From Lepidodermella squamata (taxonomy: Eukaryota > Animalia > Gastrotricha): a stretch of 64,000 bases of DNA. Under the pieces are notes generated by a model. That model did not search any database and was not told the origin of the DNA. It worked only from the letters and a program-made list of their open reading frames with translations. The position numbers and the translations under genes were made by a program. The stretch lies in NCBI GenBank assembly GCA_047495785.1, contig JBLDXI010000050.1, forward strand, positions 310,001-374,000, written 5' to 3'. Shown piece by piece: positions 36,496 through 60,638 of this stretch. Position 1 is the first letter of the stretch. Every line of letters begins with the position of its first letter.

Positions 36496-38030
36496 ATGAA
36501 TTTTTTGAAATTGTACGAATCTGACGGAAGCGTACAGGAATTTGAGGTCTCCAACGATGGGCAGTCGGTCGAGAATCAAGATCTGGACTGGGACGAAGAT
36601 GACCCTGCTCTGGTTGACGATGAAAATGGCTTTATTGCCGACCCGAAGCCGACAAATGAATTTGAGTTTGACTCGTTCGAAACTTTGCGATTCGGCATTA
36701 CATTCCAAGAAGCCAAGGACTACGTCAAGCGGAACTACGGCATTCTTTGGATTGACACTACCAAGAGCGGTTTCAACAAGCAAACATGCTATTACGTTTG
36801 TAAGCATCGGAAGTCAGGCTCAAAGGATTGCCCCCACCGGGGTGTACTCAAATGGTCTCCTGACCAAGCCGTGTTTTCGTGTGGCGGCGCTCATGTGCAT
36901 CCAAGCAATTCCACAAGCGTTTTAACAGCCGAGGTGAGGCGATATGTGCTGGATCATATCAATGATCCACCCAAGTACATCAGGGAGCGGCTCATCAAAG
37001 ACAATCCAAAGCTGACAACTAGGCAAGTCGCCAATTTGAAGCAACAGTTGAAGAGAAAACATCGAATGGCAACTGTTGGTCCTGACGCGCTTTCAAGCTC
37101 TTTCGGAACAGCTGAGCTTCGTGCCTGGTGCGAATCGCGAACTCAGAAGCCTGTCGATGACAAACAACCTTATGTCGTCCACTAGGAAGTCGAGGAATCG
37201 CTGGCAAACAAGGATAGGAAGCCGTTCTATAGATAGGATAGAAAGTTTATGCCGCTTTATCTTCCGATGGCGGTAATGGCAGATGGCGCGGGCTATATTA
37301 CTACTGCGATCGAAACAATCTTTGGCAAGGGAGCAGTGCTACGATTGTTGTGCTATTTTCATGTGAAGTTCAACGCGCGGAAATGGTTTGGGCGTAAGTA
37401 ATTTGCCTCTTTCCGACGGTCGTAAGACAATTTTACCTTTGTTAGAGTTCTTAGAGTCGGATCAAATTGTGGTACAAGCTGCACGACCTACTAACGCTCG
37501 TTCAGCTCGCATTGTCACGCCTTGAGGTAATTCCGACGGTGTTAAGATATTCCGAAATTACCTAACAATTTTTCATTTTTAGTTTTTGCTGTTGTGGCAG
37601 CTTGCCAAGGATGAGATGGCGGCCAGCCGATGTTCATGCTGAGTTTGTCGCTTATTTCGAGCCAATATGCCAATATTGGTCACAAGCTGGATTCAGTCGA
37701 TTCCGCGCTGGTGCTGCGCGGTAACCCTCGGGGTAGGCCACCTCGTCAAGGTCGTGCGCTGTAATTGGCTCAGCAGGTTGGCATGGCTCCTGAAACTGCT
37801 TTCGAGGAAGAGGGCGCGGGCGGCCACCAGGTCGTGGATTAGGACGAGGACGGGGATCAGTTTATTTGCTGGCAGTTGAAGATGCTCCGATTGCCGCTAC
37901 AGCAGTGATGACACGAAACCGAGGTCGCGCTCGTGGACGCGGGGTTGAGCCTCCAGAAGAGCTGGTTGCTCCGGCGGTTGCTCGCGGCCGTGGCGCGGGT
38001 CGCCGACCGGGGCGGGGACGTTCTTAATCA
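36496..38030 (+). mobile_element. Decayed Mutator-like (MULE) transposase
   Basis: N-terminal YYVC..C..H.H zinc-ribbon. Downstream fragment VMADGAGYITTAIETIFG..RLLCYFHV carries the MULE D and CxxH motifs. Internal stop/deletion; no TIRs identified. Confidence 0.7.
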
Positions 38031-39676: not shown

Positions 39677-41014
39677 TGAACAAATGAACAAATGAAAATG
39701 TTTTATTTACGTCCACCTTCGGCTAAAAGTGATGGTAATATATATACAAGCCTTACCCGTGAGGGTTTAGGGGACGGCTGACGACGAGAAATCAGCTTCA
39801 GGAACAGTCGCGAACAATCTGCTTTTTCCCATGAATTCATAATTTTCTATATTGTTACATAGTAGCTGCCATTCTTCCCGGTCTCTAGCTGTTACTTCCG
39901 CCAATTCTAAATCCGCAATTTTGTGAATTTCGATGCGTCGCATCAATAAGGTTGATTTACGGGGTTGCCCTCGTTTTTTAGGTTCATTAGGATGCCCCTG
40001 ATACGTTTTTCATGTATATAAAAAATTTTGATTTTTAGAAGGCTTCTTCGGAGGCAGTCAGACCATCGGGTTGGCGGCCTGCCGCGACGCAAGTACCAAC
40101 TCGGGTCGACTGCTTTCCAATAATACATAATACTCGTGAGACTTTCAGGGTCATATTCGTCCTGTCGAATTATATGGCCAAAATATTTCAGACGAAATTT
40201 TTCAATCAATTTACTCAATTCCATTACGTCGCAGATCAGTCTAATATCAACATTAGGAATATAATCTGTCCTAAACAGACCCATAATTGTTCTAAGCCAT
40301 CGCATAAAGGTGACATTTAACCTTTGCTCTTGTTGGGTGGTCAGGTTCCAGGTTTCGCAGGCATAGGTGACGGTAGGAATAACAACGCATTTAAGGACTT
40401 TCAATTTCGTAGCTAAGCTCACGTGTTTTCTATTAAACATAAGTTTATTGAGGGCACCAAAGCAGCCGCCAGCTTTTGCTATGCGTGCCTTGATCTCCTC
40501 GTCCATTTTCCCGTCAGAAGTGATGATGCTTCCTAAATATTTGAAAGACGTCACTTTTTCCAAAAGTTTGCCGTCTAATTCAAGTTGGTAGTTTCTATCC
40601 TCACCGATCACCATGTATTGTGTTTTACTAATGCTGATTTTCAAGCCTAGCTCCGTACATGCCTTATTGAAAACATCCAATAATAGTTTAATTTCTTCAT
40701 GACTCATATCTATTAAAGTTCCATCATCCGCGAAAGCAATCAGGTTCAAAAATTGTTCAGTATTAATAGGGAAGCCACCTGGGGTGTCCATCAATTTTCG
40801 GCAGATTTTATCGAACGTTGCGATGAAGAGTAGCGGAGACAAGGGACAGCCTTGCCGTAAGCCCCTCTTCACCACGAGTTGATTATTTATTTTGACTGCT
40901 ACTTTGTTACATTTATAAAAGCTTTTAACAGCCGCAATAAGGTTTGCATCGACACCTAGTTCCTCGAGCGCGGCCCAGACCTTCTCGCGGTCGATCAGAT
41001 CGTAGGCCTTCTCC
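39677..41014 (-). mobile_element. 5'-truncated non-LTR retrotransposon (RTE-like) with reverse transcriptase C-terminal half
   Basis: ORF 39943-41019: EKAYD, GLRQGCPLSPLLF, AFADD, FKYLGS, YACETW, RLKYFGHI. 3' tail of CATTTGTT repeats. 12-bp TSD AGCAATCGAAAA at 39665-39676 and 41015-41026. Confidence 0.92.
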
Positions 41015-41026
41015 AGCAATCGAAAA

Positions 41027-41452: not shown

Positions 41453-42416
41453 CTAAGCGGTGGCGCCGCAGGTTTCAATACCCGCGATATTATATATGGT
41501 AGCAGTGCCAAAACCCGGTGTTTTTTTGGCATCTGGAGTGACACCGGCAAGTGCAGTGCAGCAACCTGCGAACGTAGCGTATTGATAAGCCGTAACGGAT
41601 GCCGCCTGGCATATTATAATTTAAAAGACAATTTATATAGATGAACAACAGAATGGATGCTCACCAATCCACTAGCTCCTTGTACATTAGTAGAACTGCT
41701 AGCAGTGTGGGGGAAACGTACACATGACCCAACAGCTGCAATAGTTGCAGCTGCACCTGTTATTTTGTATGGAGTCGCATCCAATGCTCCAATGCATGTC
41801 AGAATTGGCATTGCATTACTCGGCTGCGGTAGTGCTTCGTATCTGATATTGGCAGTTGTCGCAGTTGTGGCACCACAGCATAGTGCAAATGTGCTGAAGG
41901 TATTAACTGAGTCAGAAGCAATCTATCCACATCAAACTCCAAACTAATATGATTAGCTGCACGCAAAAAATAATTACCGTAGCAGCAGTAGGTGCTGTAA
42001 TGTACTTAGTACAAATTGTGGATCCAGTTCCGGCTTCGTTATGACAAAATTTGACAGTTTTAGCAACCCCAGTAGCATCAGCGGCAGCAGACCCCTGAGT
42101 CGTCATTGAGCAAAGCTGGTAGAGTAGCTGGTATTGGGAGTCATTGGATGAGAAAAATAACATCTCGATTATGATAATGAGGGATTTTGCGGATTACCGT
42201 AGCTTGGCACGTCTGACCATTTGTTGCACACTGATTGTCGGTTTTGGCGATACAATTCTTGGCGGTAGTATCACAGATACTAGGAGTCGCTGCGCATTGT
42301 TGATTTGCGGCGCAACCAGCGCTGCCCGTTGGGCACGGGGTTGTCGTCGTCGACGCAGGGCAAGCTGTGGCTGCGGCACAGGCGGCAGCGATTATCGCCA
42401 GAGTAAGGTAAGCCAT
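41453..42416 (-). CDS. Secreted Cys/Thr/Ala-rich protein, copy 2 (multi-exon)
   Basis: MAYLTLAIIAAACAAATACPASTTTTPCPT; CVRFPHTA; same terminal-exon structure as 14174-15089. Confidence 0.75.
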
Positions 42417-43902
42417 CTGAAGACTTGTTATCAAGCAAAGAAGAAGAGGCTGTTGCTCTTGGAACAATTCCACCAGGAATTAAATGCCGCTACGCATCTT
42501 GTCAGACATACTTTGTGTTAACCTCCATGTATATTTTCAAGTTATGACAAGTTTTTAATACTATTAAGGGAGAAACAGGCACCATGGCTGACCGGAACAA
42601 CGTCCTGGTTTATCGATTTTATATCGAAGTCCCTCGGTCCATGTCAATATTTTAGATTCAATGCGTTACCAAGGCGTTCAATTTTTCGAGTATATACGAT
42701 ATATATAAGATATTACGTGCGGGGCTTTGGACTTGGCTTTAAACGCAAAAGCATGTTGTGGCGCGTGAATGACATGACGGGAAGTAGTTCCGACTGACAC
42801 AAGCATCAGCTAGTGCAGTATGATATGCGCAAAATAAGCTCTACGGGATACTTGCTTTTAATGCGCTCATTTCAATGTGGCGCTGGGGGATTATTTAATG
42901 CATTTTTCATCTTATTCCATTTTTATTCCACCTCAAATCTCAAATTGGAAAATCTGTCACGCCGTTCCGGGGAATTCTCTCATTGTAAACTTGTTCTCAA
43001 AATACTTCCGGTCGTGGTCAGTGGATGGATTTTTTGGCCACATTAACTTCATAATCAACAAGCAATCAAGCAACTCGCTCGGTTGGGTCTTCTCGCTGCA
43101 TATTTAACGGCTCACATTAATCCCAAGCAATATAAAAATCACCATCCTTCGGCATCAGCCACCTCACCCTGAGCTCCGTGCTCCGTCATGGTTCTCGGTC
43201 AGCCATTATAGTTCGGTATACTCCTGTTACTAAACAAGAGAACTCATATTTTCCTTGAAAACACCTGTTTTCTAAAGCCTAGAGCTATTCATCCCTTCCC
43301 GAACTGAAATTTTTGGGTAAAATTGATGTCAAGCCGTGTAAAGCCAAATAATTGCGGGTTTTCGGAACTAAACGGATGTAAATGGTCGAAATTTTGTTGA
43401 TGAAAGTAAATGTAAGGCCTGTTTTGGCGATGTATTTTGTTGTAAGGCTCGAAAATAGTGGATGTCTTAACTCTTTCACTGCCAGAGTTTTCTCCCGGAG
43501 ATTTTTTTCTCACGTGAGTTTTTCTCCCCGGAGAAACCCAACTTTCACCTAGCGAGATGCTGGAATAGCGATTTCGCGTTTTGTGTTATGTTTGTTCAAG
43601 GTTTAAAATAAACAAAACATGCGCGTTTATCGCCGCTGTTAGCTGTTATGCAAACAAATCGGGCGCGCCTTGGGTGACTCTCAAGTGCGACCAGTAAACA
43701 AAGACGCGGTCTTCGCCCTCGCTGTTGAATGCGTAAATCAAACTTGAAGCCTGTTTTCGAAACGTTATTATTTGCGCAAACCGCCAAGTAGTGAAAATTC
43801 AGGTGAAAATAATTCAGGAGTTATCAAAAATCATTGGAACAAAAACATTTATTTCAAGCAACAAGAACAAAAAACTGATCACCACGCACAAAGCACAAAT
43901 TG

Positions 43903-44676
43903 CTAATTTTTCGCCGATTTTTTCTTCGACTCGTATGCTTTCTTTTTACGATTACACTCTGCGAAATTTTGGCAAATAGCACGTCGAATTAGGAAAAAAT
44001 GATCGTATTTTTGCATTACAAGTTTTGTTACATCGTCAATCAAATCCGCATCATTCCAAACTGACGCATTGCTAAATTGCCGGGACCGACTTTCACATTC
44101 TTTCAAAATTCTTTTCGCAAACAAACAAGGTTTATCTTTATGCATTTCATAAGCCGATTTTATGATTTCTTGCTCCAGCACATGCGAACCTAACAATATC
44201 ATGCTATTTGTTTCATTATCACCAGGCAGGTCGGCGAAACTTCTTGCGATCCATTGAGCGTGGGAGTGATTTTCATTTGTTTCCGATTGACGCGCGTCAC
44301 GCCGAAAAACGAGCCGATGAACCTGTCGAAGCGGCGTAATTTTAGACGCTGCGTCTTTGAGCGGTAGAATTGCGGATACAGCTGTTGGCGGCGCTAACGC
44401 CGACGTGGTGCTTTGTTGCAATGGCGTTGAAGAGCTTGAGGCGGAGATCGATTCCGACTCGCTGCCGAAGTCATACACGCCAATTCGAGAATCGCTCTAC
44501 GAATGTGGAAAAAATGCGAAAATGCTGACGGATCTAATTTTTCAAGCGACTTACATCGGCCGTTGAACCGCTCTCTTCAAATCGGCTGGTTCCATAGAAT
44601 TCTCGGTTTGTCTCCCGAAAAGCTAGGCGATGCCTCTCGACCACAGTAGAAACTAAATTCGTAAATATTTGCATTC
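43903..44676 (-). CDS. Cargo gene 1: Ser-rich protein with possible C-terminal BEN-like domain (intron 44497-44554; 5' end unresolved)
   Basis: 58-nt GTAAGT...TAG intron in frame. Helical C-terminus LFAKRILKE...DLIDDVTKLV...IRRAICQNFAECNRKKK. Confidence 0.4.
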
Positions 44677-45047: not shown

Positions 45048-45998
45048 TCAATCCTCGGATTTCTTTTTCGACCTTGTTTTGACAGATGCAACATCAGTTT
45101 TTCGCGGGGTTAAATCGCGCCCTAGTTTGCAGAGATAAGTTGAACTGTAGTCCCAGCAATGGCTAAGCCTTTTCCATAAATTATGAACAGGCGACCATAT
45201 TTCTCCAAAAATCAAGAAATGGATGATGGATAGCCAGCGAAGCAAAATGGTCAATAGATACTCTCCAAGAAAATATCGCCATTCAAACCCACTTTTTGAT
45301 TTGAGAAAAATTTGGAGAGCGAACTCGGCGAAGGCAACAAGATTCAAAGATATTAGGAATTTTTTTCGTCGAAATAATGTCAGAAAAATATTGTGAAATA
45401 TGTAGAATGAGACTCGATACCTCAAGAAAGACTGTTCAAGCGAAGCGTTGTAAAAGACTTGAGAAGTAACAGCGACGAAAAGCGTCGACTCTTTGAAATA
45501 TGAGAAAAAATCAATCACGGGGCCTTCAATTGGAAAGCAATCAACTACTGCCTGAAAAAAGTGTCTAGCGAGTATGTAGAGAGGAGAATTTTCTTCCTTG
45601 AAAAATAAAAAATAGCTACATATTTCGCGAATTTCGCCAACGAAAATCATGTAAGTGAGCCAGTCTAAAACTTCGAGAGAATTTTTCAAGCAATTAATTT
45701 GGCTGGCGAATTCTGTAGGCTGTGTCATAGGACAATTTATAGCTTTTGTAGAGTTTTTGGCCGACAGATAGCATTTGAGAGCTGACTCGGCGACATTTTG
45801 CCACGACATCACTGAGTTTGCGCACAACTTTTTCGCGTGTTCAAGCCATCTATCGACACAAGAATTGTTCTGAGCTTTCAGCTGGTCATAATAGTATCGA
45901 CCTGAAATGACCTGAGTTGGCGATATTTCAGTTATTTCCAAGCAGCACGCAGGCATAATAAGCGCCGCCGCAAAAAATACATGAAAAAAGCCTTTCAT
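45048..45998 (-). CDS. Cargo gene 2: KAR5/GEX1/Brambleberry-like membrane protein, intronless
   Basis: Signal peptide; six-Cys domain SC-x11-C...A....KCY...C...CLK...W..Y..F......IC; 2-3 hydrophobic segments; basic tail. Confidence 0.7.
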   Translation of the reverse strand: MKGFFHVFFAAALIMPACCLEITEISPTQVISGRYYYDQLKAQNNSCVDRWLEHAKKLCANSVMSWQNVAESALKCYLSAKNSTKAINCPMTQPTEFASQINCLKNSLEVLDWLTYMIFVGEIREICSYFLFFKEENSPLYILARHFFQAVVDCFPIEGPVIDFFSYFKESTLFVAVTSQVFYNASLEQSFLRYRVSFYIFHNIFLTLFRRKKFLISLNLVAFAEFALQIFLKSKSGFEWRYFLGEYLLTILLRWLSIIHFLIFGEIWSPVHNLWKRLSHCWDYSSTYLCKLGRDLTPRKTDVASVKTRSKKKSED

Positions 45999-46179
45999 TA
46001 CAAAATGACGGAAATTCTGTTTGAAAAATTTATCTGGTGACTGGTGACTTTTTGGAGCTGGCTATTTATTGCTTGAACGGCTCATCAGGTATCCGGAAAT
46101 GGCTTTGGCAAATATTTTCATTTCAATTTAATTCCTTTCTAGTCCCACGCCGTTGACATAAAATACGTGATCCTCACTC

Positions 46180-46390
46180 GAGCGTGTGATTACGCACCGG
46201 GCGCGCACCTGTGGAGAAAGCGCGCGCGCGCACCTGTGGCGAGGCGGGCGGTTGTAGTGCGCGGTCAGTAATTACAGACTTTGAAATGGCACCGGTGGGC
46301 GTCGCGGCCGGTTGACATGCCCTTGGAGCCGCTCGGCTGTTTTGGCAGACAGCGTGACCGCGGTCGGCTGTGACGACGCCGACGTAATGA
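46180..46390. promoter_or_regulatory. GC/CpG-rich putative bidirectional promoter
   Basis: Lies between divergent cargo genes and has two GCGCGCACCTGTGG motifs (46201-46239). Confidence 0.4.
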
Positions 46391-46473
46391 TACAGTAAAA
46401 CGGTTAAAAGGTGACTACAAAAGGAGGAAAGAAAATAAAAATAAGTAAATTCGAGCTAACAAATTTCTGAATA

Positions 46474-47097
46474 ATGTCGACTTTTGACTTCGATATTTAT
46501 TATCAGCCAGGATACGGCATCGTCACCCGTTCAGCGCGGCCGGGTTTGCTTGCTCTATCCACAACAACGACAACGACGACAACAACCGCTTGGTCTGCGC
46601 CTGGTACTTCGACGGCGACATTGCCGACAACTGCGACAAGTGCGACTACAACGACCCCGGCTACTCCCGACTTCGGCAATGTGCTCATGGCGTTGGCGGC
46701 CGGTTTTGGGGCGGCATTGTCGATGTTGGCGCTGACGTGTTCTCTTTTTATTTTCTTCATCTGGTGGTGCTGCTTTCGCCGCAAATACCCTGTGCCCTAC
46801 AAGCCAGGCAACGGCACTGCAGAACAAGGCCTAATCGCAGTTGGCGCTATTGTTGCTCAGCGGCAGGTACCTGCTCGACCTCCTCCGCCGGCTGTTCTGT
46901 CTCGAGCCGGGCCGATTCTGCCGAATCTTCCTCCGATTCTGCCACCGCCTCCAATCGAAGCCACCATTCAGCCTGCCGCCATTCCCGCAATCGTCGCACC
47001 GCCGCCTCCTGTTTTCGTGTTTCGAGCGCCCGTTCCGGCAGCGCCACCTGTTGCGCCAGCTCCGGTGGCGCCTCGTCGCGGCTTCCGCGTGCGGTGA
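46474..47097 (+). CDS. Cargo gene 3: Thr-rich ectodomain, single TM, Pro-rich tail
   Basis: TTTTTT stalk; TM ending IWWCCFRRK; poly-Pro tail. A paralog downstream supports this reading frame. Confidence 0.65.
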   Translation: MSTFDFDIYYQPGYGIVTRSARPGLLALSTTTTTTTTTAWSAPGTSTATLPTTATSATTTTPATPDFGNVLMALAAGFGAALSMLALTCSLFIFFIWWCCFRRKYPVPYKPGNGTAEQGLIAVGAIVAQRQVPARPPPPAVLSRAGPILPNLPPILPPPPIEATIQPAAIPAIVAPPPPVFVFRAPVPAAPPVAPAPVAPRRGFRVR

Positions 47098-47198: not shown

Positions 47199-49751
47199 AT
47201 GGATGCCAGCGAGTGGATCAATTCTGATGAACCGCCTCTACCTTTCCGTTCACCGGAACCCAAAAACTTTAAATCCAGCCTGATTGCGGTCGATTGTCAC
47301 CAGTTAGCTTTTTCCGGCTAATTTTCACCATCGAGTTTCTCGAAATGGTATGCAAGGAAACGAATAGATATGCCAATCAAAAATTACGTCAAATTGGGCT
47401 TAAACCCAACGCCAGAATCAACGACTGGGTGCCATTGACAGTTCCGGAGCTTGAGCGATTTTTCGGTTTATGGCTGCTAATGGGAGTGATTCGAAAGCCA
47501 ACAATCGCAAGCTACTGGACGGAGGACAAACTGATGGCAACACCAATATTCAATTTGACGATGTCCCGAAATCGATTTGAAGCGATTTTGTCAAATCTTC
47601 ATTTCAACAACAACCAATTTCTGGCGCAAAACATCAAAACCGATCGCCTCTATAAAATCAGACCTGTTCTAAACTTCTATCAAAATCGGATGAATGACCT
47701 TTATTCACCTGGCAAAAATCTGGCAATCGATGAATCTCAAGTGCTTTTCAAGGGAAGGCTGGCATTCAAGTCGTACAACAAGGCGAAAAAGGCGAAGCTC
47801 GGTATAAAGGTAAGATAGGTCAAAGGTTCTATAAAATGAAATATATATATATATCAAAATCGGAATGCAATTTTAATTTTAAAGCGGCATTTTTGAGACA
47901 ATTTATGGCCATGTTTTACTTGAGACAGAACCCCACAAAAATCATAAAACCGTTTTGCTTTAATTTTTCATCAAAACGCTAGGCAATGAAAATAAAAAAA
48001 TGAAAAAATTCGAAAATATCAAAATATCTGGAGAACCTTTCCTTTACTTCCTTTACTCCCTTTGCTTTCAGCTTTGCTGTCATTTTACGACTTGGTCATT
48101 TGGCTATAAAAGACATAGAATAAGTAGCCGTTATTTCTGGAATTCTGGAGCAGAAAAACGGCTCAGAAAAATAACAAAAAAATCCGTATATGCGTGAAGT
48201 GATATTCTTGAAAATTATAATACCCAAATCTCGGATTCTATCGGAATAGAACTCTTGCCAATATTTTACTTTCGAAGCCATAATTTTAATTTCGAAGCTA
48301 GGATTTTACATTTTGAAGCCACAGTTTTAATTTCGAAGCTAGGATTTTACTTTTTGAAGCCACAATTTTAATTTCGAAGCTAAAATTTTAAATTTCGAAG
48401 ATCAGGTTCGATCTAGTGAGACTAGAGACTAGTGTGAAAATCTTGGTTTTCAATCTGCTATTTTACAGATCTATATGCTATGTGAGTCATCAACTGGAAT
48501 CCCTCTTCGCTTCCATGTCTACTCAGGCGCGGATAATGTTCAAGATGATATTATTTCTGGCAAAAGCCACACATTTTCAGTCGTGAAATCACTCATCAAA
48601 TACCTTCTTGGCAAGGGACACTCGCTTTTTGTCGACAATTTTTACACTTCCGTCGAACTCGCTAAATACCTATTGGCTAATCTAACTCACCTAACCGGAA
48701 CACTGAAAAAAACCGTGTCGGAAACCCGCCCGAAGTGGTTCAAGCTAGCTTGAAGACAGGTGAAATAATTTGCCGAAGACAAGACGATATCAATGTACTC
48801 AAGTGGAAGGACAATCGCGAAGTACTTATGCTATCGACTGAGTTTGCCCCAGAAATGATTCCGATTACCCTTCCGGCTCGAATTCAACGGGTTATCGAGC
48901 ACAATGAAACGCAAACAGGGCAAAGTTCGGTATATCAAGAGATTGAGGCAGATTCTACCGGAGTGGAAGTGGATTCAGAAGCCAAATTTGACGGCGATGA
49001 TAGCGGCGACAACGATTCTGCCATGTCCAAGTACTTCCTAGCTTCGGATTCAGAGGGCGATAGCGAAGATGGAGAGGAGGAGGATGTTGAGTCTGAAACC
49101 GGCCTGAAGCGCAAACTCGACGACGATGACGATGCGGCACCGCGTATGGGCGAGCCACCGGCTAAAAGGATCAAGACTGTCATGAAACCTCTCATTGTCG
49201 ATCAATACAATAAATCAATGAATGCGGTGGATTGTCACGATCAAAATGTGAGCAAACATATTTGAGCTATTCGTAAATATTTTATCTTTTCACATTTTTT
49301 CAGGCCGCGTACTATGATGCAAATAGGAAGTCGTATAAATGGTATCGAAAAATTTTCTTCAGGATTCTTGAGAGCGGCATGATTGCTTCCCATCAATTCT
49401 TCAAGTTGCAAAGCGGAAATACCTCTCGGATGTCGGATGTCGCTTCTTGAATTTCGCAAAGCAGTCATCAGAGCTCTGATCGGAATGATAGGAGAGGATG
49501 GCTTAGTGGCGAGTTCTGAGTCCTTCGATTCATCAAAAAGCAACGATTCTTCCAGCAGCAGCTCAAAAGCCGAGATTCATGATCTTACCAAAATGCCTGG
49601 TAAAAAAGAGCGCCCTTGTATGAACTGCGGCGGCAGGGTTTCACATTGGTGCCTGGCTTGCCCACCGAAAGAGGACGGTTCTCATCCTGCTTTTCACATG
49701 AACACCTGCTTCAACAAATGGCACCAGATGAATGTGTTCAACAAGCGATAA
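47199..49751 (+). pseudogene. piggyBac (PGBD-like) transposase, frameshifted (introns 47810-48468 and 49248-49303)
   Basis: ETNRYA, MSRNRFE, DRLYKIRP; catalytic IDES, VDNFYTS, AVDCHDQ; KWYRKIFF; C-terminal Cys-rich domain. Lesions: frameshift and stop near 47250-47272, short A-run at ~48706-48712, 7-bp duplication TCGGATG near 49426-49440. Confidence 0.9.
48262..48400. repeat. Minisatellite (~20/21-bp subunits, ~41-bp period) in transposase intron 1
   Basis: Repeated TTTTAATTTCGAAGCTAGGA / TTTTAC(A/T)TTTTGAAGCCACA. Confidence 0.8.
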
Positions 49752-50909: not shown

Positions 50910-51707
50910 ATGTTTTACCCACAGTTGCTTTGGTCTATACTTTCCGAGGATGCTAAGCCCCCACTTTCGACACCATTTACGCGAAAGATAGAGGCACCCT
51001 CAACCTGGTCGCATGAAATCAGCTGTTGTGACTGTTACTCATTACCATCATCGAACGGCGTCGTTAAGCCTGGGGCTATTTGTGTTGTTTCCACTGGGCT
51101 TTGTTTGACTCCTCAACTTCTCAACTACAGCAGCCTTTTCATCGAAGGTCACTTCGAGTCTCTTATTCCTGGTCTTCAATTAACCGGCAGCAATCGCCTT
51201 ACGCTGCGAAATTTTTCATCACGTGAACTTGTCTTTGAGCTGGCAAATATCACCAGTTTCGATGTTGAACTGTCCAACATGCGACCTTTTATTCGCATCG
51301 CCTTCTTGTGCTATTTCACCCCGGTTTCTTCTGTTATTTTGCCGCCACGTTCCTTTTCTGCGGAGTGTATTGATGTTGCTGAGGCTGCTTATCGTCAAGG
51401 GACTCTTCAGTCTTCTACTGGAGTTGATCTCCCCATGTCGTCTTCACTGCCGAATTACGGTCGTCTTCGAGATACATCCAAGGTGCAGTTACAAACGTCC
51501 ATGGTTTCCTTTCGAACAAAGTTACCGCTGAGGTTTCAATGCCCCCGATGTCTGCGATTTTACGCCAAAAAGGGGAATCTCAAGTATCACCGCTGTAAAC
51601 CTGTTGCCAATGCACCCACTGATGCCCCACGTGAGCATGCAGCAGAACTTCAGCTTCATTCATCAGGGCTCATATCATCAGACTTGTGTTTATTTGATGA
51701 AAATTAG
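50910..51707 (+). CDS. Degenerate dUTPase-like domain fused to a zinc-finger-like motif
   Basis: LSEDAKPP, CDCYS..VKPGAICVVSTGLCL, LTLRNFSSRELVF and IRIAFL parallel dUTPase scaffold positions, without RSG or DxDY. C-terminal FQCPRCLRFYAKKGNLKYHRC. Confidence 0.55.
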   Translation: MFYPQLLWSILSEDAKPPLSTPFTRKIEAPSTWSHEISCCDCYSLPSSNGVVKPGAICVVSTGLCLTPQLLNYSSLFIEGHFESLIPGLQLTGSNRLTLRNFSSRELVFELANITSFDVELSNMRPFIRIAFLCYFTPVSSVILPPRSFSAECIDVAEAAYRQGTLQSSTGVDLPMSSSLPNYGRLRDTSKVQLQTSMVSFRTKLPLRFQCPRCLRFYAKKGNLKYHRCKPVANAPTDAPREHAAELQLHSSGLISSDLCLFDEN

Positions 51708-51721
51708 GACTATGAGCCACG

Positions 51722-52987
51722 ATGAATTCCATTGCTAGTAATAAGGCTAAACTTCTAAATAATTTATATTTTAATAAAACATTCCCTGGTTCATTTGCCG
51801 GTTCGCAGTCCTTCTACAAACAATTACGACTAGCTGGCTATAAACATATTTCCAAAGCTGAGGTAGTCAAATGGTTGTCTGATCAACGGCCCTATAGCAT
51901 TTACAAGCAAATTTCAACACGCTCAACTCGGCAATTTAACCCTATTATAGTCACTCGAAAGAACGACACCTGGGCGGCTGATTTGATGCAAATCGCTAAC
52001 GTATCCCAGGAAAACGATAACCTCTGCTACGTTTTATGTGTGGTCGATGTTTTTTCGCGATACGCTATGGTTTATCCTCAGCTTGACAAAACTGGCGCGA
52101 CTACGGCTTCGTCGTTTTCAAAACTCTTGGAGGCTAATCATCCTAATAAATGCACCAAGCTCCTGGTTGATAGGGGTAGTGAGTTCTACGCTAAAGAATT
52201 TCAACAGTTGGTTACAAGTTTCTCCATTCACATGTATTCAATCCACTCATCTGTGAAGGCCTCTCCTGTAGAAAGATTCATTCGCACTCTTCGCCAAAAA
52301 ATAGCCAGACATTCCATGTTTTCTGGGTCTGTACGTTTTGTAAACACTTTGGACGACTTGGTTGATGGTTATAATCGAAGTTATCATTCTGCAATCAGGA
52401 CTTCCCCGGCTATTTTATGGGCGTTGCCCTGCTCTGATGATTCCAACCCATCGGATGTGTTTCACCAGTTTTCCCGAGGAAACATTGATGTTTTCGTTCG
52501 CCACGAGGATCCTTTGAACTATCATGCGGCTGTCGCTTCCCTTAAACGTAGCTCCGCCAACTTTAATCGCACTAACGACAGGCAAACTAAAATCCGACAA
52601 CCATGTTTCAAAGTTGGCGATTCAGTGCGTATTTCAATGTCTAGAGGTTTGTTTGACCGAAGTCATAATGCATCCTTTTCAGAAGCCTTTTACACTATTC
52701 GGAGCGTTACTAGAGCGTCTCCTCCTCTACGGCCTTTTCATACTTACCACCTGAATGAGTGGAATCCTGCTACAGGTCTTTTCAATCGTAAATTGTTAGG
52801 AAGTTTTTACGAGCGTGAATTGCAGCCTGTTAGTCTCCCCTCGTCGTTTCCGATTGAGTCAATAGTCGAGCTAGGCAAAGGCAAACGAAAGAAGCAAGTT
52901 AAGGTACGTTGGCGTGGCTATGGACCAGAGGCAGACTCTTGGATTGACAAGTCAGAGCTCGGGGACATCACCTCAACATCGAACTGA
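51722..52987 (+). CDS. Polinton retroviral-like (RVE) integrase with C-terminal chromodomain
   Basis: YFN..PGSF; WAADL, VDRGSEF, VERFIRTL (DDE); YNRSYHSAI; FKVGDSVRIS; GSFYERELQ; VRWRGYGPEADSWI. Confidence 0.95.
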   Translation: MNSIASNKAKLLNNLYFNKTFPGSFAGSQSFYKQLRLAGYKHISKAEVVKWLSDQRPYSIYKQISTRSTRQFNPIIVTRKNDTWAADLMQIANVSQENDNLCYVLCVVDVFSRYAMVYPQLDKTGATTASSFSKLLEANHPNKCTKLLVDRGSEFYAKEFQQLVTSFSIHMYSIHSSVKASPVERFIRTLRQKIARHSMFSGSVRFVNTLDDLVDGYNRSYHSAIRTSPAILWALPCSDDSNPSDVFHQFSRGNIDVFVRHEDPLNYHAAVASLKRSSANFNRTNDRQTKIRQPCFKVGDSVRISMSRGLFDRSHNASFSEAFYTIRSVTRASPPLRPFHTYHLNEWNPATGLFNRKLLGSFYERELQPVSLPSSFPIESIVELGKGKRKKQVKVRWRGYGPEADSWIDKSELGDITSTSN

Positions 52988-53148
52988 TAGCATATCTCTA
53001 CGTTTTCATACTAATCGACGCATTTTCTGTGTTCATTGCTTTAGCGCTATCTTTTTTGTGATTTTGTTTATGATCCAAATTTTCAGCTACTTTCACCAAG
53101 AGAGGGAAATTGCTCTCACTTCAAGCTCTGCATTGGCCTCTGTTGATA

Positions 53149-54421
53149 ATGGCGTTGACTCATCAAACAGATCACTACATTTATATTAGCAGCTCTGTCG
53201 ACCGGCATTTGTATAAAGACAATTGCGCCTCAAATTTTACTGTTAGTTTTCGAATAATTTTGAAGGAGCTGCTGAAAATTATTTTTGCTCTAACATTAGG
53301 TAAAACTTCCTCATGCTATTAATTTGGATGGGGCCTATGAAGCTGCTCTCGTCCAATATTACGGTCCGTCTAGCTGGATAAATTTTGATGGTGGTGTTTT
53401 TCATATCCTCAGCTGGGATGTCAAGCAGTTACTCCCCGCTAATAGAAGGGTAGTAACACTAAGAATTCCAAGCGGACATTTGGCTTCGATAAGACAGCTC
53501 TTGGATCGCATGAACAGCTCCTTGTCTTCAAATAATTTAGCAGATTTTGTCAATTTTTCTTTCGAGGAAGGGTTCTGTAAAGTGGTTTTAAAAAAGCCTA
53601 ATACTGGGTTAGTTCTTAGAAAATATTTGGCTAACATGCTTGGTTTTCCGGAACAAGCTCTCTTATATTCTTTCACATTACGCGATGATGAGTGTGTGAC
53701 GGAAGGCTTAAATTCTGACGCAAAAGGAAACGATGGGGACTCGACTGTTCCTCAATTCATGTATAATCATAAAGCTGAACGTTGCCTGCGTTTTGCGGAA
53801 GAGTCGGAATCACTTTTTTCTCAAGTATTTTCCCCCGAACTGAAAAAGTTATCAGTCAAATCTCAGCCTCCCACTGTAAGTCTTCTCGATGGGAAGGCAG
53901 GCATTTTGGGAGTGTGTTTCGAACCTAAGGATTCTAACATTAAGAGATTGGATAACGCTGTTGTTGAGGACATTTGGGTAGAGCTTAATTTCAACCCCTA
54001 CCCAGCTATCATCATTAAGCTCCTTCTTTTATCTGGAATGGACGAAAGTGCTTCTAAGACTGTTCTTACAGCCCCCTTTCCACCTCAGCTTGGTACTGCT
54101 TCATTTCCGATGATGTTTTTGTATCTAAATATTCTTCAACCTTTGTTTGTTTCTAATGCATTTGCTCGACTTTTACGTATAATTCCAACATCTGGCGTTC
54201 ATGTTGTTAATGCTATGAGCACCAATGGTGGTGATGATATGTTTCCTTCTTCAGTCATGTCTGTTTCGTTCGACCCACTTTTGTATATCCCAGTCGAAGC
54301 ACGCTTACTCGAGTATCTAACATGCGCACTGTACGATGACTCTGGAGCTTTGATTAGATTTAATCAATCTTCGAAAACAATTATTTGCATCCATATTAGG
54401 CCACGGTTTATAAATAAATAA
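53149..54421 (+). CDS. Minor capsid protein (penton), ~404 aa spliced (intron 53242-53299)
   Basis: Splicing restores YIYISSS...NCASNFT|VKLPHAINLDGAYEAALV. C-terminal MFLYLNIL..LLRII..PLLYIPV..DDSG..IHIR. Confidence 0.88.
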
Positions 54422-54439
54422 TAGAAAATATAATTATTA

Positions 54440-54907
54440 ATGTCATCACGTTTGACTGTTGACGACTATGTCAGCATCTTTCTGTCTCAGCGCGGCGGCG
54501 GTGGTGAAAGCGGCCCGTTCGATAACGTATACAAAGGCTCTCGATTTATATATCCTCTTGTTTATCAGGATGGCGGTGGGGCATTTGGCCTAATTTCGCA
54601 GTTTTTTAGGCAGCATGTGGCACCCTTAATTCCTTCCTTTCTAAAGAGAGCTGCTCAAGCCGGCACTGCCTTAGCAAGTGATCTACTTGCAGATCAGCAA
54701 AACCAAGATCCATCAGCTACCAGAGTCCCTGTTTCGTCGTTAGTGAGGAAACACTCTCTTGATGCCTTACGTGGTTCAGCAAAGGATGCCCTTACCTATG
54801 CTCGAGAGCAGTTGGGTTCTGGCTCCAAGCGCAAAAGTAGGGCAAGGCCGACATCTTCTCGCAAGCGCCATTCACCTAAAAAGAGTCGAGTTGTGACATT
54901 TTACTAA
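54440..54907 (+). CDS. Virion core protein precursor (basic C-terminus, QxGxG motifs)
   Basis: QRGGG, YKG..YQDGGG, QLGSG followed by an Arg/Lys-rich tail. Lies between penton and hexon. Confidence 0.8.
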   Translation: MSSRLTVDDYVSIFLSQRGGGGESGPFDNVYKGSRFIYPLVYQDGGGAFGLISQFFRQHVAPLIPSFLKRAAQAGTALASDLLADQQNQDPSATRVPVSSLVRKHSLDALRGSAKDALTYAREQLGSGSKRKSRARPTSSRKRHSPKKSRVVTFY

Positions 54908-54959
54908 TAGTCTGCATTTTTTCCTATTTTTCAAATAAAAAACACGTTTCCATTTGAAA

Positions 54960-56411
54960 ATGCAGAGCCAAAAATCCCCAGAACTAGCCTTTCACAATTC
55001 CCTCAATCTTTTCGGAGTTAAGCCTATACAAGAGCAGATAACAAACCAATACATCACCTCTTACAACGTTTTTTCCGGAGTTTCTGATTCTGGTTTCGAA
55101 TTTTCTATTCCTGGTGAGTACTTCGTAATTTATTGAAGCGTTATTGTTGACAATAAAGATGAATAGCCGACAATAACTACACTGCCTTGAATCGAAGCTT
55201 CCTTTCCTTTGAAATTTCGGTGAGCAAGACAAAGGATGCTGATGATGCGAATGCAAACAAAAACGTGGCATTGGTTAATAATGCTTTCCACACCGTTTTT
55301 CAGGTTAAAATGAATTATATGCACAACCATTATATAAAACGAAGATCTTTATCGATTTTTTCAGCGAGTTGATGTTTATGCCTCAGGCCAGCTTATTGGC
55401 GACATGGTTCCATACCAAGCATATAAAGCCTACATTTCACATCTTCTGGGCTGTACGGATGAGCAAAAATCGAAAAACCTAGTTTTGCAGGGATGGGCTG
55501 ACGATGCCCCTGACGATGAGGCTGAGGATGCTAACAAGTCAACAACTGTTAAGGATGTCGGGTGGGATGTTCGTCAAAAATGGACGTCTACAAACAAGAA
55601 ACGGTTGTTTTTGTGCGGCACCCCTTATTCCGAGTTGTTTTTTTGCCCAAAACTGCTATTGCCTCACACTCCTCTAGTTATTCGTTTTTCTACGAATTCT
55701 CCCGAGTTTGTCCTTTGGACTAAAAAAGACACTCCAGCGACGGACTCATGGAAATTTTTCATCCACAACCCTATGCTTCATATCAGACGTGTTGTCGTTG
55801 CTGATACCGTTTCACTTGCAGCAGAAAGGGCTCTAATGAGCGGTCCTGCACTATACCCTTTTCAACGTCAAACAGTCAAAATTTTGCAGTTGGCATCTGG
55901 GTCTTCAACGTATTCTTTTGGTGGATTGGTATTAGGGTCAATTCCAGCGCGTGTTATAATGGGGTTCGTTGCCGATAATGCCTTCAAAGGGACCTTGTCT
56001 ACATCACCATTCGCTTTTGAGCATTTCAACATTAATCAAATTCGGCTTTATCACGACAATAACAACATTCCACACAGTCCGCTGACGATAAACAACGAAA
56101 ATCGCGCTTTTCAATGCAGTGAGGCATATTTTGCCTTGGCACAGGCTCTTAACCCTTATTCCAACCGCCCGATCGGGTTGTCTCCAACTAGTTACGGGCT
56201 TCGTCATAAAACTTTGTTTGCTTTTGATATGTCTACGGATGGTTCAAATCAGGCTTATTCTAGCGCAAAGCATGGCTCTATTCGACTGGAATTGACGTTT
56301 AGTGCTGCTCTCGCAAAAAATGTCATTCTTGTGCTTTTATTTGAGAGTGATGGGATGGTTGAAATTAGTTCACAGCGTACCGTTGTAACTGATAATTTTA
56401 GCAGTTCATGA
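54960..56411 (+). CDS. Major capsid protein (double jelly-roll hexon), ~445 aa spliced (introns 55114-55166 and 55304-55364)
   Basis: LNLF..PIQ; FEFSIP|ADNNYTALNRSFL; NAFHTVFQ|RVDVY; YKAYISHLL; GSIPARVIMGFV; SPFAFEHF; LFAFDM; GSIRLELTF. Confidence 0.93.
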
Positions 56412-56423
56412 TTTTACGCCAAT

Positions 56424-57011
56424 ATGAATTCTGTCGAGTTGCTGCTTATCCTCAAGAAAATAAATCCTAACCATGCTCGTGTCCTACCGCGGGATTTTGC
56501 GTTACCGACTGTTGTAAGTGATGTGGAAACATTAATTCGAGAAGAAGCCATGCATTCGCTTTGCTACATTCTAAACGATGAAGTTTCTTCTATGGCAGGG
56601 AATCACTGGTTGGGACTTCGTATTAGCCGCAAAAGCATTGAAATCGTTGATTCCTATGGCAGAAATCTCCACGAGTATGGTTTGCGCGAGTTGATGAATT
56701 TTCTAGAGTTGACGGCAGAAGCTTTTCAGTGTCAAATTTTAATTAACTCTTTTAAGCTTCAAAGTGACCAAACTGAAGTATGCGGCTACTATGTGCTGTT
56801 TTTCCATCGAATGCTCTCTCTAGACATCAATTATTTTCAAATAATTCATTTTCTTAAATGGAATTTTGCGACTTATTGTGAGAGAGATTGTTATGTTTTT
56901 ACGTTCGTTTCATCATTGTTCGGATTTTATAAACAATATTTGAATCCGCATTTTGTTAGTCAGCCGACTGAATGCAAGTCTGCGAAACAAAAGTTCCCCT
57001 GTTGGATTTGA
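56424..57011 (+). CDS. Adenain-like cysteine maturation protease
   Basis: GNHWLG, VDSYG, LQS, EVCGYY (His-Asp-Gln-Cys). Confidence 0.9.
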   Translation: MNSVELLLILKKINPNHARVLPRDFALPTVVSDVETLIREEAMHSLCYILNDEVSSMAGNHWLGLRISRKSIEIVDSYGRNLHEYGLRELMNFLELTAEAFQCQILINSFKLQSDQTEVCGYYVLFFHRMLSLDINYFQIIHFLKWNFATYCERDCYVFTFVSSLFGFYKQYLNPHFVSQPTECKSAKQKFPCWI

Positions 57012-57754
57012 CGATTAAACATCCTATGAGACTGCTTTTGGTCGGTCCGTCTTATTGTGGTAAAAGTGCAACATGTTTAAGGCTACTGGAACATCCGATG
57101 AGCATTATTCCAGTTCCTAATAGAGTCGTTCTCATTCAAGGCATTCCAAATCCTAACTTTGCTAAAAAAGTTCAGGAAGTTTGCCGTCGTAGTAGGAATG
57201 TTGAAGCTGAAGTTCTCACTGGTGGACTATCTTCCTTCAGTATAAGTGATTTCAATCCAGCCGATACCAACCTTCTCATAGTCGATGATGCGCAGCATGA
57301 AATAACGGAAGGTCTAGATATGTCAACGTTGTACATTGGCGGCTCTCATCATCGCAGTATAACTGTTATTGCTACTATGCAAAACCTTTTCCCAAAAGGT
57401 ATTCAATTTTTCATTTTCCAGTAACCTAATTTTTCATATGGGGCAATTGTAGGTCGTAGTGCCAGAGATGTTTTTTTGAACACGCAATTATTTTGCTTGT
57501 GGGCAAACAGAGCAGATCAGCAGCAAATTTCCCTCCTAGCGAGAAGGATCTTTCCTGCAAATGCTGGGTTTTTTATGGAAGCTTTTCACCTAGCTACATC
57601 ATCTAAGCCACATGGGTATTTGGTTGTTGATTTAAGTGAGCACACCGCAGAATGGGCTCGTTTGCGCGATGGTCTCGCTAACGATCTCACCAGTTTTTTT
57701 GTTTCTCCTGAAGATCTCGAAGAGCTACCTAAAATTGCAGATCTAGCATGTTAA
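56972..57754 (+). CDS. FtsK/A32-like DNA packaging ATPase (intron 57399-57452)
   Basis: Walker A GPSYCGKS; Walker B LLIVDD; SHHRSI; QNLFPK|GRSARDVFLNTQ; PHGYLVVDL. Confidence 0.92.
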
Positions 57755-57824
57755 TCTGGAATAATTGCTATAAAAATGAAGCTGTAGACAAGTGGAACTG
57801 TTTACCTTACTCTTATTGCTTATT

Positions 57825-58226
57825 ATGACTTATGATTTAGAGGAAAAATCTGAAATTTACCAAGCTCGAATCTTGCTAGAGGAACTGAATAAACCCTCTC
57901 TCGATCCTAATTTTGTGAGATTCCTGGTTGCTGTAGCTAATAAGCGAGCCATTAGTATTATTTGTGAAGCAGCGCTTAACATTTTGCACAAGCGAATCAA
58001 ATTGGAAATTTCCCTCGCCAAGCGTCTAAGGAGGCACGATAAATTTCTTCGAATTATCAGCAAAAAGTCAAAGTTTGGTCTTGAAGGCAATCGACGCCAA
58101 ATATTGCAGCTGTTTGCAAAGGATCTCCTCTCTTCAACTCTAGCACTCAAACTACTTTTAGCAGCAGTCAGAAAAATCATCCCAATTTTGCTTCGCCGTA
58201 GCAAACAGCAAAGTATATCAACATGA
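57825..58226 (+). CDS. Conserved small basic Polinton protein (PW-like)
   Basis: ISIICEAALNILHKRIKL...KRLRRHDKFLRII pattern; TATAAAA at ~57769. Confidence 0.7.
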   Translation: MTYDLEEKSEIYQARILLEELNKPSLDPNFVRFLVAVANKRAISIICEAALNILHKRIKLEISLAKRLRRHDKFLRIISKKSKFGLEGNRRQILQLFAKDLLSSTLALKLLLAAVRKIIPILLRRSKQQSIST

Positions 58227-59236: not shown

Positions 59237-59293
59237 ACAGTGGAATTCGAATAAAGAAATTGATTTATCAATAGAGTTTTTAGTTTTTGAAGT

Positions 59294-59859: not shown

Positions 59860-59972
59860 CACTATCACCTTAGTTAAAGGGATGTGTTAAGGTTGAATAG
59901 ATTTTCCGTGCTTGCAGTATAAGTGGCTTTTCAGTAGCATTTGGAGTGGGAGCATTTCCATGGAATCTCCTT

Positions 59973-60455: not shown

Positions 60456-60638
60456 CACAGGTTTGAATAGCCCTGCTTTTTTATTTCACAATAATGAGGC
60501 CTAGATGCCTTTTGAAACTTGTCTGTCCAATCATATTAGAGGTAAAACCCTATTAATGCAGCAACCGGATTTGCGCATGACTAGTCTAGGAGATTCGCAG
60601 TTTTAAATTTTTCTTTTACACACCCGACGCTCACAAAA

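What the first reader, a model, noticed from the sequence alone, without database searches (positions are those of the whole stretch)
45048..45998. Transposon-borne KAR5/GEX1/Brambleberry-like nuclear-envelope fusion protein
Seen: an intact, intronless 316-aa ORF with signal peptide, GRYYYDQLKAQNNSC-x11-C...NVAESALKCY...C...NCLK...DWLTYMIFVGEIREIC, 2-3 hydrophobic segments and a basic tail. It sits between a TTAA/piggyBac terminus and a piggyBac transposase. Known: this six-Cys spacing (C-x11-C ... Y..F......IC) is the Cys-rich domain of yeast Kar5/Tht1, plant GEX1 and fish Brambleberry, which mediate karyogamy or karyomere fusion; I matched it from memory. The long luminal coiled coil of cellular members appears to be missing. 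Inference: a DNA transposon captured a shortened nuclear-fusion factor and kept it intact while its own transposase decayed. It might act at pronuclear or karyomere fusion, for nuclear access, as a dominant negative, or to bias transmission. I know of no described transposon with this cargo.
Basis: partly seen in the sequence, partly recalled or inferred. Interest (0 to 1): 0.92.

Follow-up and report, generated by a model that had tools for sequence, protein, structure and literature searches.

The report
Short Kar5/GEX1-like membrane gene beside transposons
An intact 316-codon gene in a transposon-rich stretch of an invertebrate-type genome encodes a membrane protein whose six-cysteine domain follows the published pattern of the Kar5/GEX1/Brambleberry nuclear-fusion family but lacks that family's coiled coil, and nothing in the window shows that a transposon carries it.

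Summary
The ORF is real: 45048-45998, minus strand, 316 aa, within a 337-codon stop-free run that no simulated sequence reached. It has a signal-peptide-like N-terminus, six cysteines (C47 to C127), three N-glycosylation sequons, two or three hydrophobic helices and a basic tail.

The Cys spacing here is 11-16-12-13-23. Yeast Kar5p has 11-22-13-10-24 and plant GEX1 has 11-19-12-8-22. The shared residues S-C, C-[FY], C-L-K and Y-x2-F-x2-E-x3-I-C sit in the same register. The pattern occurred in 0 of 300,000 shuffles.

No profile, sequence or fold search supports homology. Pfam Tht1, phmmer against 1.84 billion proteins and two word-index searches were blank, and the AF2 model (pLDDT 44) is unusable. 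The coiled coil really is missing.

The "transposon-borne" reading is not supported. No TTAA-flanked inverted repeat pair exists. The only TTAA...CCCTAG lookalike lies inside the ORF. A separate 207-aa ORF and a GC-rich spacer lie between the ORF and the piggyBac-like gene. That gene has two introns and two frame breaks, a lesion density at which an intact 951-nt ORF is unremarkable (P about 0.37).

Verdict: probably a divergent, coil-less Kar5/GEX1/Brambleberry-type protein sitting among transposons. Cargo status is untestable here. The contig is not human.

The parts
45048..45998 (-). Intact single-exon ORF, 316 aa (stop included): the Kar5/GEX1/Brambleberry-CRD-like membrane protein
45939..45998 (-). 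Residues 1-20: signal-peptide-like hydrophobic N-terminus (M-K, hydrophobic core, P-A-C-C)
   Evidence: Kyte-Doolittle scan; inference, as no SignalP was available
45618..45860 (-). Six-Cys domain, C47-x11-C59-x16-C76-x12-C89-x13-C103-x23-C127. It carries S46-C47, C76-Y77, C103-L-K and Y116-x2-F119-x2-E122-x3-I126-C127. N-glycosylation sequons are at N44 and N82.
   Evidence: compared
45423..45617 (-). Residues 128-192: short aromatic-rich linker containing Pro138, Pro156 and Pro160 and a sequon at N184. It occupies the place of the roughly 300-aa coiled-coil region of Kar5p.
   Evidence: Kar5p domain map
45192..45422 (-). Residues 193-269: two strong hydrophobic helices (213-233, 244-269) and one weaker helix (about 193-211), separated by RRKK and a 10-aa loop
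45051..45191 (-). Residues 270-316: basic C-terminal tail (11 K/R, 2 Cys)
45110..45125 (+). TTAA followed 6 nt later by CCCTAG: a lookalike of a piggyBac end. It lies inside the ORF and has no inverted partner.
45999..46473 (.). Spacer between the ORF and the divergently oriented 207-aa ORF. Over 46000-46470 it has GC 0.49 and CpG o/e 1.43. It contains GCGCGCACCTGTGG twice.
46474..47097 (+). Separate 207-aa ORF (Thr-rich stretch, one TM helix, Pro-rich tail) lying between the Cys-rich ORF and the transposase gene. Only sub-threshold Pfam hits.
47199..49751 (+). piggyBac-like transposase gene (PF13843 plus a C-terminal Cys-rich end). It has two GT-AG introns (47810-48468 and 49248-49303) and two frame breaks: an A7 run at 48706-48712 and a 7-nt tandem duplication at 49427-49440. 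The first roughly 30 codons are in yet another frame.

Best explanation
The ORF is a genuine, currently intact single-exon gene for an ER/nuclear-envelope-type membrane protein.

Inferred layout:
- a cleavable signal peptide;
- a short aromatic linker where that family has its coiled-coil hairpin;
- a cluster of two or three TM helices;
- a basic tail facing the cytosol or nucleoplasm, which is a GEX1-like topology.

It is most likely a highly divergent, shortened member or offshoot of that family. It lies in a transposon-dense part of an invertebrate-type animal genome without CpG depletion. It sits head-to-head with, but is not demonstrably part of, a young piggyBac-like pseudogene.

Inferred mechanism, not shown: the CRD is held close to the membrane in the perinuclear/ER lumen, where it makes the disulfide-dependent or protein-protein contacts attributed to Kar5p's cysteines (localisation, partner recruitment, coupling of the membranes). 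Without the coiled coil, which in Kar5p is needed for inner-membrane fusion, it probably acts as an accessory or modulator, or as a lineage-specific minimal form, rather than as a complete fusion factor.
For: - The ORF is beyond chance.
- The Cys spacing 11-16-12-13-23 lies close to the two published sets: Kar5p C56/68/91/105/116/141 gives 11-22-13-10-24, and plant GEX1 gives 11-19-12-8-22.
- Non-Cys residues are shared in register with all or most of the nine plant CRDs: S before Cys1, F/Y after Cys3, L-K after Cys5, and Y-x2-F-x2-E-x3-I-C ending at Cys6.
- The spacing pattern alone matched 26 of 200,000 shuffles of the ORF. With the tail motif it matched 0 of 200,000, and the stricter version matched 0 of 300,000. 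It is the only one of 169 stop-free runs of at least 80 aa in the window that matches.
- The architecture agrees with the family description: signal peptide, CRD about 25 residues after it, sequons only before the TM cluster, and two or three C-terminal TM helices.
- The family is known to be too divergent for BLAST even within fungi, and members have been assigned by CRD plus topology. Blank sequence searches are therefore expected.
- The Pfam Tht1 model compared in the Kar5p study held 96 sequences. From my own knowledge it is essentially fungal.
Against: - No statistical homology test is positive. There is no Pfam hit for the whole ORF at E<=1, nor for its halves at E<=10, where the only hit is Galaxin_repeat at 0.021.
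- phmmer against 1.84e9 representatives gave only a tandem-repeat artefact.
- The word-index searches of the whole ORF and of residues 28-135 (the latter at E<=10) were blank. The PDB sequence search was blank.
- The AF2 single-sequence model has pLDDT 44, and all Foldseek matches have E>1.
- The pattern was defined after seeing both sequences, so the shuffle P-values are optimistic.
- The coiled coil, which is part of the family's shared architecture and essential in Kar5p, is absent.
- There are no homologues, so there is no evidence of purifying selection or of expression.
Confidence: 0.55

Rival explanations
1. One reading: the gene is cargo of a piggyBac transposon. A captured, shortened nuclear-fusion factor moves with the element and is kept by selection on the element.
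For: - It lies 1.2 kb from a piggyBac-like transposase gene, in divergent orientation.
- The region is transposon-dense.
- The gene is intronless, whereas the neighbouring piggyBac-like gene has introns. That would fit capture of a processed copy.
- A natural piggyBac with large cargo exists: Teratorn (PMC6431247).
Against: - No TTAA-flanked TIR pair was found, with left ends searched over 41.0-47.3 kb and right ends over 49.6-54.0 kb, and no inverted repeat of at least 13 nt encloses the ORF together with the whole transposase gene.
- The only TTAA...CCCTAG site is inside the ORF and is unpaired.
- An unrelated ORF and a GC-rich spacer separate the gene from the transposase.
- There is one copy in the 64 kb, and no relatives in viral or metagenome contigs.
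- The ORF's intactness compared with the transposase's decay is not significant (P about 0.37).
Confidence: 0.1
2. It is an unrelated, lineage-specific (orphan) secreted/membrane Cys-rich protein. Its six-Cys spacing and few shared residues resemble the Kar5/GEX1 CRD by convergence or chance.
For: - All profile, sequence and fold searches are blank.
- By my hand alignment of the ORF to the printed AtGEX1 CRD, identity is only about 14 of 88 positions, six of them Cys.
- The coiled coil is absent.
- Other ORFs in this window are also orphans: the 759-aa ANF_receptor ORF found no relatives either.
Against: - Spacing, register of non-Cys residues, position after the signal peptide and the C-terminal TM cluster all coincide.
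- The pattern occurred in 0 of 300,000 shuffles.
- No alternative Cys-rich family matched in Pfam.
Confidence: 0.25
3. It is a non-functional relic, either a young retrocopy or a fragment of a once longer family member. It has not yet acquired a stop codon and has no present function.
For: - It is intronless in a genome that has introns.
- It is embedded among dead transposons.
- It shows no marked third-position GC bias: GC1/2/3 are 0.41/0.36/0.41.
- At the neighbour's lesion density an intact 951-nt ORF is expected 37% of the time.
- It is truncated relative to the family.
Against: - The architecture is complete and coherent, from signal peptide through TM helices and tail to the stop, rather than an arbitrary fragment.
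- All six CRD cysteines are kept.
- A GC-rich, CpG-rich upstream spacer is compatible with a promoter.
Confidence: 0.1

Closest known systems
Plant/protist GEX1 (GAMETE EXPRESSED 1)
   Same: - N-terminal signal sequence.
- Six-Cys CRD with C-x11-C and C-x12-C spacings, and the Y-x2-F-x2-E-x3-I-C ending in the same register.
- Possibly three TM helices followed by a basic C-terminal tail (Arg-rich tails are highlighted in the supplement read).
   Different: - GEX1 proteins are about 590-640 aa, with two or three coiled-coil regions forming a hairpin between the CRD and the TMs. This protein is 316 aa with a 65-85-aa non-coiled linker.
- Identity outside the Cys framework is very low.
- No profile match was demonstrated.
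Yeast Kar5p / S. pombe Tht1 (Pfam PF04163)
   Same: - Signal peptide.
- Six conserved luminal cysteines with the first pair spaced x11 and the last pair about x24.
- A TM, short loop, TM hairpin near the C-terminus.
   Different: - No hit to PF04163.
- Kar5p is 504 aa, with two coiled coils that are essential for nuclear fusion.
- Kar5p ends at its second TM, whereas this protein has a 47-aa basic tail.
Zebrafish Brambleberry
   Same: It belongs to the same family by literature description: CRD, TM helices, and a role in pronuclear and karyomere fusion. It is the animal representative.
   Different: - It could not be compared residue by residue, because no Brambleberry sequence was available by reference.
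- Brambleberry is about 64 kDa and has coiled coils and two TMs.
Teratorn (piggyBac plus herpesvirus fusion in teleosts)
   Same: It is the described example of a natural piggyBac-type element carrying large foreign cargo.
   Different: Teratorn has defined TIRs, an active transposase and many copies. Here no element boundaries, no second copy and no link between ORF and transposase could be shown.

Membership tests
Kar5/GEX1/Brambleberry nuclear-fusion family | N-terminal Cys-rich domain with six conserved cysteines in the family's spacing | tested here: met
   The ORF's spacing is 11-16-12-13-23, against Kar5p 11-22-13-10-24 and plant GEX1 11-19-12-8-22. Residues are shared in register. The pattern matched 0 of 300,000 shuffles. 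This is pattern-level evidence only.
Kar5/GEX1/Brambleberry nuclear-fusion family | Significant sequence-profile match (Pfam Tht1 PF04163 or an equivalent GEX1/Brambleberry profile) | tested here: not met
   PF04163 was not hit by the whole ORF at E<=1, nor by its two halves at E<=10. phmmer and the word-index searches were blank. GEX1/Brambleberry-specific profiles were not available in the tools, so that half of the test was not run.
Kar5/GEX1/Brambleberry nuclear-fusion family | N-terminal signal peptide | tested here: met
   Hydrophobic residues 1-26 with a small-residue cleavage region. No dedicated predictor was available.
Kar5/GEX1/Brambleberry nuclear-fusion family | One or more coiled-coil domains between the CRD and the TM helices | tested here: not met
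   Only 65-85 residues separate Cys6 from the first hydrophobic helix. They contain three prolines and are aromatic-rich. In Kar5p the equivalent stretch is about 300 aa with coils at 186-215 and 401-436.
Kar5/GEX1/Brambleberry nuclear-fusion family | [quoted passage not shown] | tested here: met
   Hydrophobic helices at 213-233 and 244-269, plus a weaker one at about 193-211.
Kar5/GEX1/Brambleberry nuclear-fusion family | Globular CRD fold as in AlphaFold models of GEX1 | tested here: inconclusive
   The single-sequence AF2 model has pLDDT 44. Foldseek against the PDB gave nothing below E=1. No AlphaFold DB library and no solved family structure were available.
Kar5/GEX1/Brambleberry nuclear-fusion family | Nuclear-envelope localisation, germline or mating-specific expression, and requirement for nuclear fusion | not testable with these tools
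   Needs RNA-seq, tagging and knock-out in the source organism.
piggyBac transposon cargo | The gene lies between the element's terminal inverted repeats, which are flanked by TTAA | tested here: not met
   No TTAA-flanked TIR pair was found. The only lookalike end lies inside the ORF and is unpaired. A decayed element could have lost its ends, so this is absence of evidence.
piggyBac transposon cargo | A piggyBac (DDE_Tnp_1_7) transposase in the same unit | tested here: inconclusive
   A transposase gene is present 1.2 kb away, but it is separated from the ORF by another ORF and a spacer. It has two introns and two frame breaks.
piggyBac transposon cargo | Multiple genomic copies that share the cargo | not testable with these tools
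   There is one copy in the 64 kb. The rest of the genome is not available. None of ten ORFs from the window is in the protein collection.

The most novel reading that the evidence does not exclude
A coil-less 'mini' Kar5/GEX1/Brambleberry protein has been captured and is carried by a mobile element. The carrier would be the adjacent piggyBac-like unit or a larger composite with the neighbouring Maverick/Polinton-like element. The protein would act at pronuclear or karyomere fusion to the element's benefit, for example in nuclear access or transmission bias. That would be the first transposon known to carry a nuclear-envelope fusion factor.
Probability: 0.07. Interest if true: 0.9.

Novelty: new variant of a known kind. 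Interest (0 to 1): 0.4.

Why it matters
If the homology holds, this is a naturally minimised member of the karyogamy family: a Cys-rich domain fused almost directly to the membrane anchor, with no coiled coil. It occurs in an animal genome that lacks CpG depletion. Such a protein would be a natural separation-of-function variant. It would bear on what the Cys-rich domain does on its own (localisation, membrane coupling, partner recruitment) as opposed to the coiled coil (inner-membrane fusion), a question left open in the Kar5p work (PMC4291462). If it were also transposon cargo, that would be a new kind of transposon-host interaction, but the present evidence does not favour that.

Tried and rejected
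- Pfam on the whole ORF and on its two halves gave no Tht1 hit, only Galaxin_repeat at E 0.021. PHROGs gave nothing.
- The PDB sequence search returned only collagen noise at E about 1.6.
- The search for homologous proteins was run on the whole ORF and on residues 28-135, the latter at E<=10. Both were blank.
- phmmer against 1.84e9 representatives gave one hit, P0001. It is a tandem-repeat protein whose score is inflated by repetition, so I rejected it.
- Exact look-ups of the ORF and of nine other ORFs from the window found nothing on record.
- The related-loci scans of metagenome and viral contigs found nothing.
- The AF2 single-sequence model was too poor to use. Foldseek on it was run for completeness and gave only noise.
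- A weak tblastn hit at 16827-16967 (E 0.07) contains a stop codon and was rejected.
- I tried to identify the organism through the 759-aa ANF_receptor ORF (blank) and through Rfam and tRNA scans (none). The taxon remains unidentified.
- Ning et al. 2013 and Abrams et al. 2012 are not held in the library.
- Step left out: BLASTP or hhalign of the ORF against the nine plant GEX1 Cys-rich domains printed in the PMC7586128 supplement. Those sequences exist only as printed letters, with OCR errors, and have no reference. I did not type them in. I compared them by eye and by short patterns instead.

Full report
**1. The observation**

The stop-free run is 337 codons. In 100 first-order Markov simulations of the window the longest run was 240, so the ORF is not a chance ORF. 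All quoted peptide strings are present.

- Cysteines lie at 18, 19, 47, 59, 76, 89, 103, 127, 154, 281 and 290.
- The N-terminal 26 residues are hydrophobic.
- Strong hydrophobic helices lie at 213-233 and 244-269, with a weaker one at about 193-211.
- The last 47 residues carry 11 K/R.
- The three N-x-S/T sequons (N44, N82, N184) all precede the strong TM helices (213-233, 244-269).

tblastn finds only this one copy in the 64 kb.

**2. The source is not human**

CpG observed/expected is 1.11, so there is no CpG depletion. The window holds:
- a PPDK_N-type ORF, a trypsin exon, a K2P-channel exon and an ANF_receptor ORF;
- many transposons: P-element-like TNP pieces, a 5'-truncated LINE RT, the piggyBac-like gene, a PIF1 fragment and an rve+chromo integrase.

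Introns are short and end in TTTTCAG-like acceptors, and TTTTCAG is about threefold enriched. I take the source for an invertebrate animal without CpG methylation. The taxon could not be identified.

**3. Is it Kar5/GEX1/Brambleberry-like?**

The statistical tests are all negative:
- no Pfam family for the whole ORF at E<=1, and nothing for its halves at E<=10 beyond Galaxin_repeat at 0.021;
- nothing in the PDB;
- nothing from two word-index searches, including the Cys-rich region alone at E<=10;
- one spurious tandem-repeat hit from phmmer against 1.84 billion representatives;
- an unusable single-sequence AF2 model with pLDDT 44;
- only noise from Foldseek.

The literature shows that such blanks are typical for this family. 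[quoted passage not shown] The Cryptococcus Kar5 had at first not been identified, and the eventual candidate was confirmed by its Cys-rich domain and its topology. The Pfam Tht1 model compared in the Kar5p study held 96 sequences, and from my own knowledge it is essentially fungal.

| Protein | Source | Cys spacing |
|---|---|---|
| Yeast Kar5p (C56, C68, C91, C105, C116, C141) | PMC4291462, | 11-22-13-10-24 |
| Plant GEX1, nine-species alignment | PMC7586128 supplement, | 11-19-12-8-22 |
| This ORF | | 11-16-12-13-23 |

Beyond the cysteines, the ORF shares these residues in the same register:
- Ser before Cys1 (plants SCW, here SCV);
- an aromatic residue after Cys3 (plants CF, here CY);
- exact x12 spacing between Cys3 and Cys4;
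- L-K after Cys5 (Arabidopsis and Brassica CLK, here CLK);
- the ending Y-x2-F-x2-E-x3-I-C (Brassica Y145, F148, E151, I155, C156; here Y116, F119, E122, I126, C127).

A spacing-only pattern that covers both published sets with a few residues of slack matched 26 of 200,000 shuffles of the ORF. With the tail motif it matched 0 of 200,000, and a stricter version matched 0 of 300,000. Among the 169 stop-free runs of at least 80 aa in the window, only this ORF matches. The pattern was written after seeing both sequences, so these numbers are optimistic, but the coincidence is far beyond composition.

[quoted passage not shown] The positive-inside rule (RRKK between the weak and the first strong helix, and a basic tail) favours a three-TM, GEX1-like topology with the tail in the cytosol or nucleoplasm. 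That topology is an inference.

**4. What does not fit**

Between Cys6 and the membrane there are only 65-85 residues, aromatic-rich and with three prolines. Kar5p has about 300 residues there, with two coils, each essential for nuclear fusion. Deleting coil 1 allows outer-membrane fusion but not inner-membrane fusion. One defining feature of the family is therefore tested and not met, and the profile test is not met either. I describe the protein as Kar5/GEX1/Brambleberry-CRD-like rather than file it as a member.

**5. Is it transposon-borne?**

The piggyBac-like gene is real (PF13843). I mapped it as follows:
- exon ending at 47809;
- GT-AG intron 47810-48468, which contains a 20/21-nt tandem array;
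- exon 48469-49247;
- GT-AG intron 49248-49303;
- exon 49304-49751, ending in the usual Cys-rich C-terminus.

The Pfam profile continues seamlessly across the first intron (positions 158 to 160). There are two frame breaks: one at an A7 run (48706-48712) and one at a 7-nt tandem duplication (49427-49440). The N-terminal roughly 30 codons are in another frame again.

Four observations argue against cargo status:
- No TTAA-flanked inverted repeats bracket the region.
- The only TTAA...CCCTAG lookalike (45110-45125) lies inside the ORF's 3' end and has no inverted partner in the window.
- A GC- and CpG-rich spacer and an independent 207-aa Thr/Pro-rich TM ORF (46474-47097) lie between the ORF and the transposase gene.
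- With two lesions in about 1.9 kb of transposase coding sequence, about one lesion is expected in 951 nt. An intact ORF has Poisson probability of about 0.37. 'Kept intact while the transposase decayed' is therefore not evidence of selection.

Copy number and synteny would decide the matter, but they need the whole genome. None of the window's ORFs is on record in the collections, and related-loci scans were empty.

**6. Verdict**

- Most likely (about 0.55): a genuine, highly divergent, coil-less relative of the karyogamy family's Cys-rich-domain proteins that simply lies in a transposon-rich region.
- About 0.25: an unrelated orphan Cys-rich membrane protein.
- About 0.1: a functionless relic.
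- About 0.1: transposon cargo.

The known natural piggyBac with large cargo is Teratorn. My one literature search on piggyBac cargo and captured genes listed no transposon carrying a nuclear-fusion factor.

**7. Step left out**

I did not run a direct BLASTP or hhalign comparison with the printed plant Cys-rich domains. They exist only as printed letters with OCR errors and have no reference. The comparison was made by eye and by short patterns.

Noticed in passing
window 50910-59683 (mostly + strand): A dense run of co-oriented intronless ORFs with negative AT skew looks like a Maverick/Polinton-type virus-like element. It holds an rve+chromodomain integrase (51722-52987, Pfam). By eye, 56424-57011 has an adenain/Ulp1-like H-W...D...Q...C-G protease motif, 56972-57424 has a P-loop (GPSYCGKS) ATPase motif, and 59294-59683 (-) has dUTPase-like motifs. 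No protein-primed polymerase or TIRs were seen in the window.
   Followed up: partly
window 59857-60552: A tandem array of a 116-nt unit, about six unit lengths in all, with the central copies identical. It lies just upstream of a deoxynucleoside-kinase ORF (60639-61403, Pfam dNK E 8e-28) and a PIF1-helicase fragment (61956-63098).
   Followed up: no
window 47199-49751 (+): The piggyBac-like gene carries two canonical GT-AG introns (659 nt and 56 nt) across which the Pfam profile or reading frame continues. That is unusual for an autonomous DNA transposon, and it might indicate a once-domesticated piggyBac-derived gene. It also has a roughly 90-aa acidic insertion (within 48735-49265).
   Followed up: partly
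window 46474-47097 (+), 42141-42473 (-), 14167-14254: Several small ORFs encode Thr/Cys/Ala-rich, mucin-like stretches with a hydrophobic segment. Their low-complexity parts give imperfect inverted repeats with each other (42336-42423 with 14167-14254; 41847-42355 with 46568-46786). They may form a small gene family or be mere low-complexity similarity.
   Followed up: no
window 43903-44478 (-): A 191-aa ORF lies just downstream of the Cys-rich ORF on the same strand, with a Ser-rich N-terminus and a basic C-terminus. It has no Pfam or PHROGs hit. By eye its C-terminal half is faintly BEN-domain-like.
   Followed up: partly
window 10540-12819 (+) and 16792-16960: A 759-aa intronless ORF has an ANF_receptor ligand-binding domain (E 4e-13) but found no relatives in the 5.8-billion-protein index at E<=1e-5. 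Its last 169 nt are duplicated at 85% identity 4.1 kb downstream.
   Followed up: partly
window 3103-4487 (-), 36496-37185 (+), 39943-41019 (-): Further transposon remains are present: P-element/THAP9-like TNP domains (Pfam), an ORF with a WRKY/FLYWCH-like C..C...H.H finger (by eye), and a 5'-truncated LINE reverse transcriptase (Pfam RVT_1).
   Followed up: no
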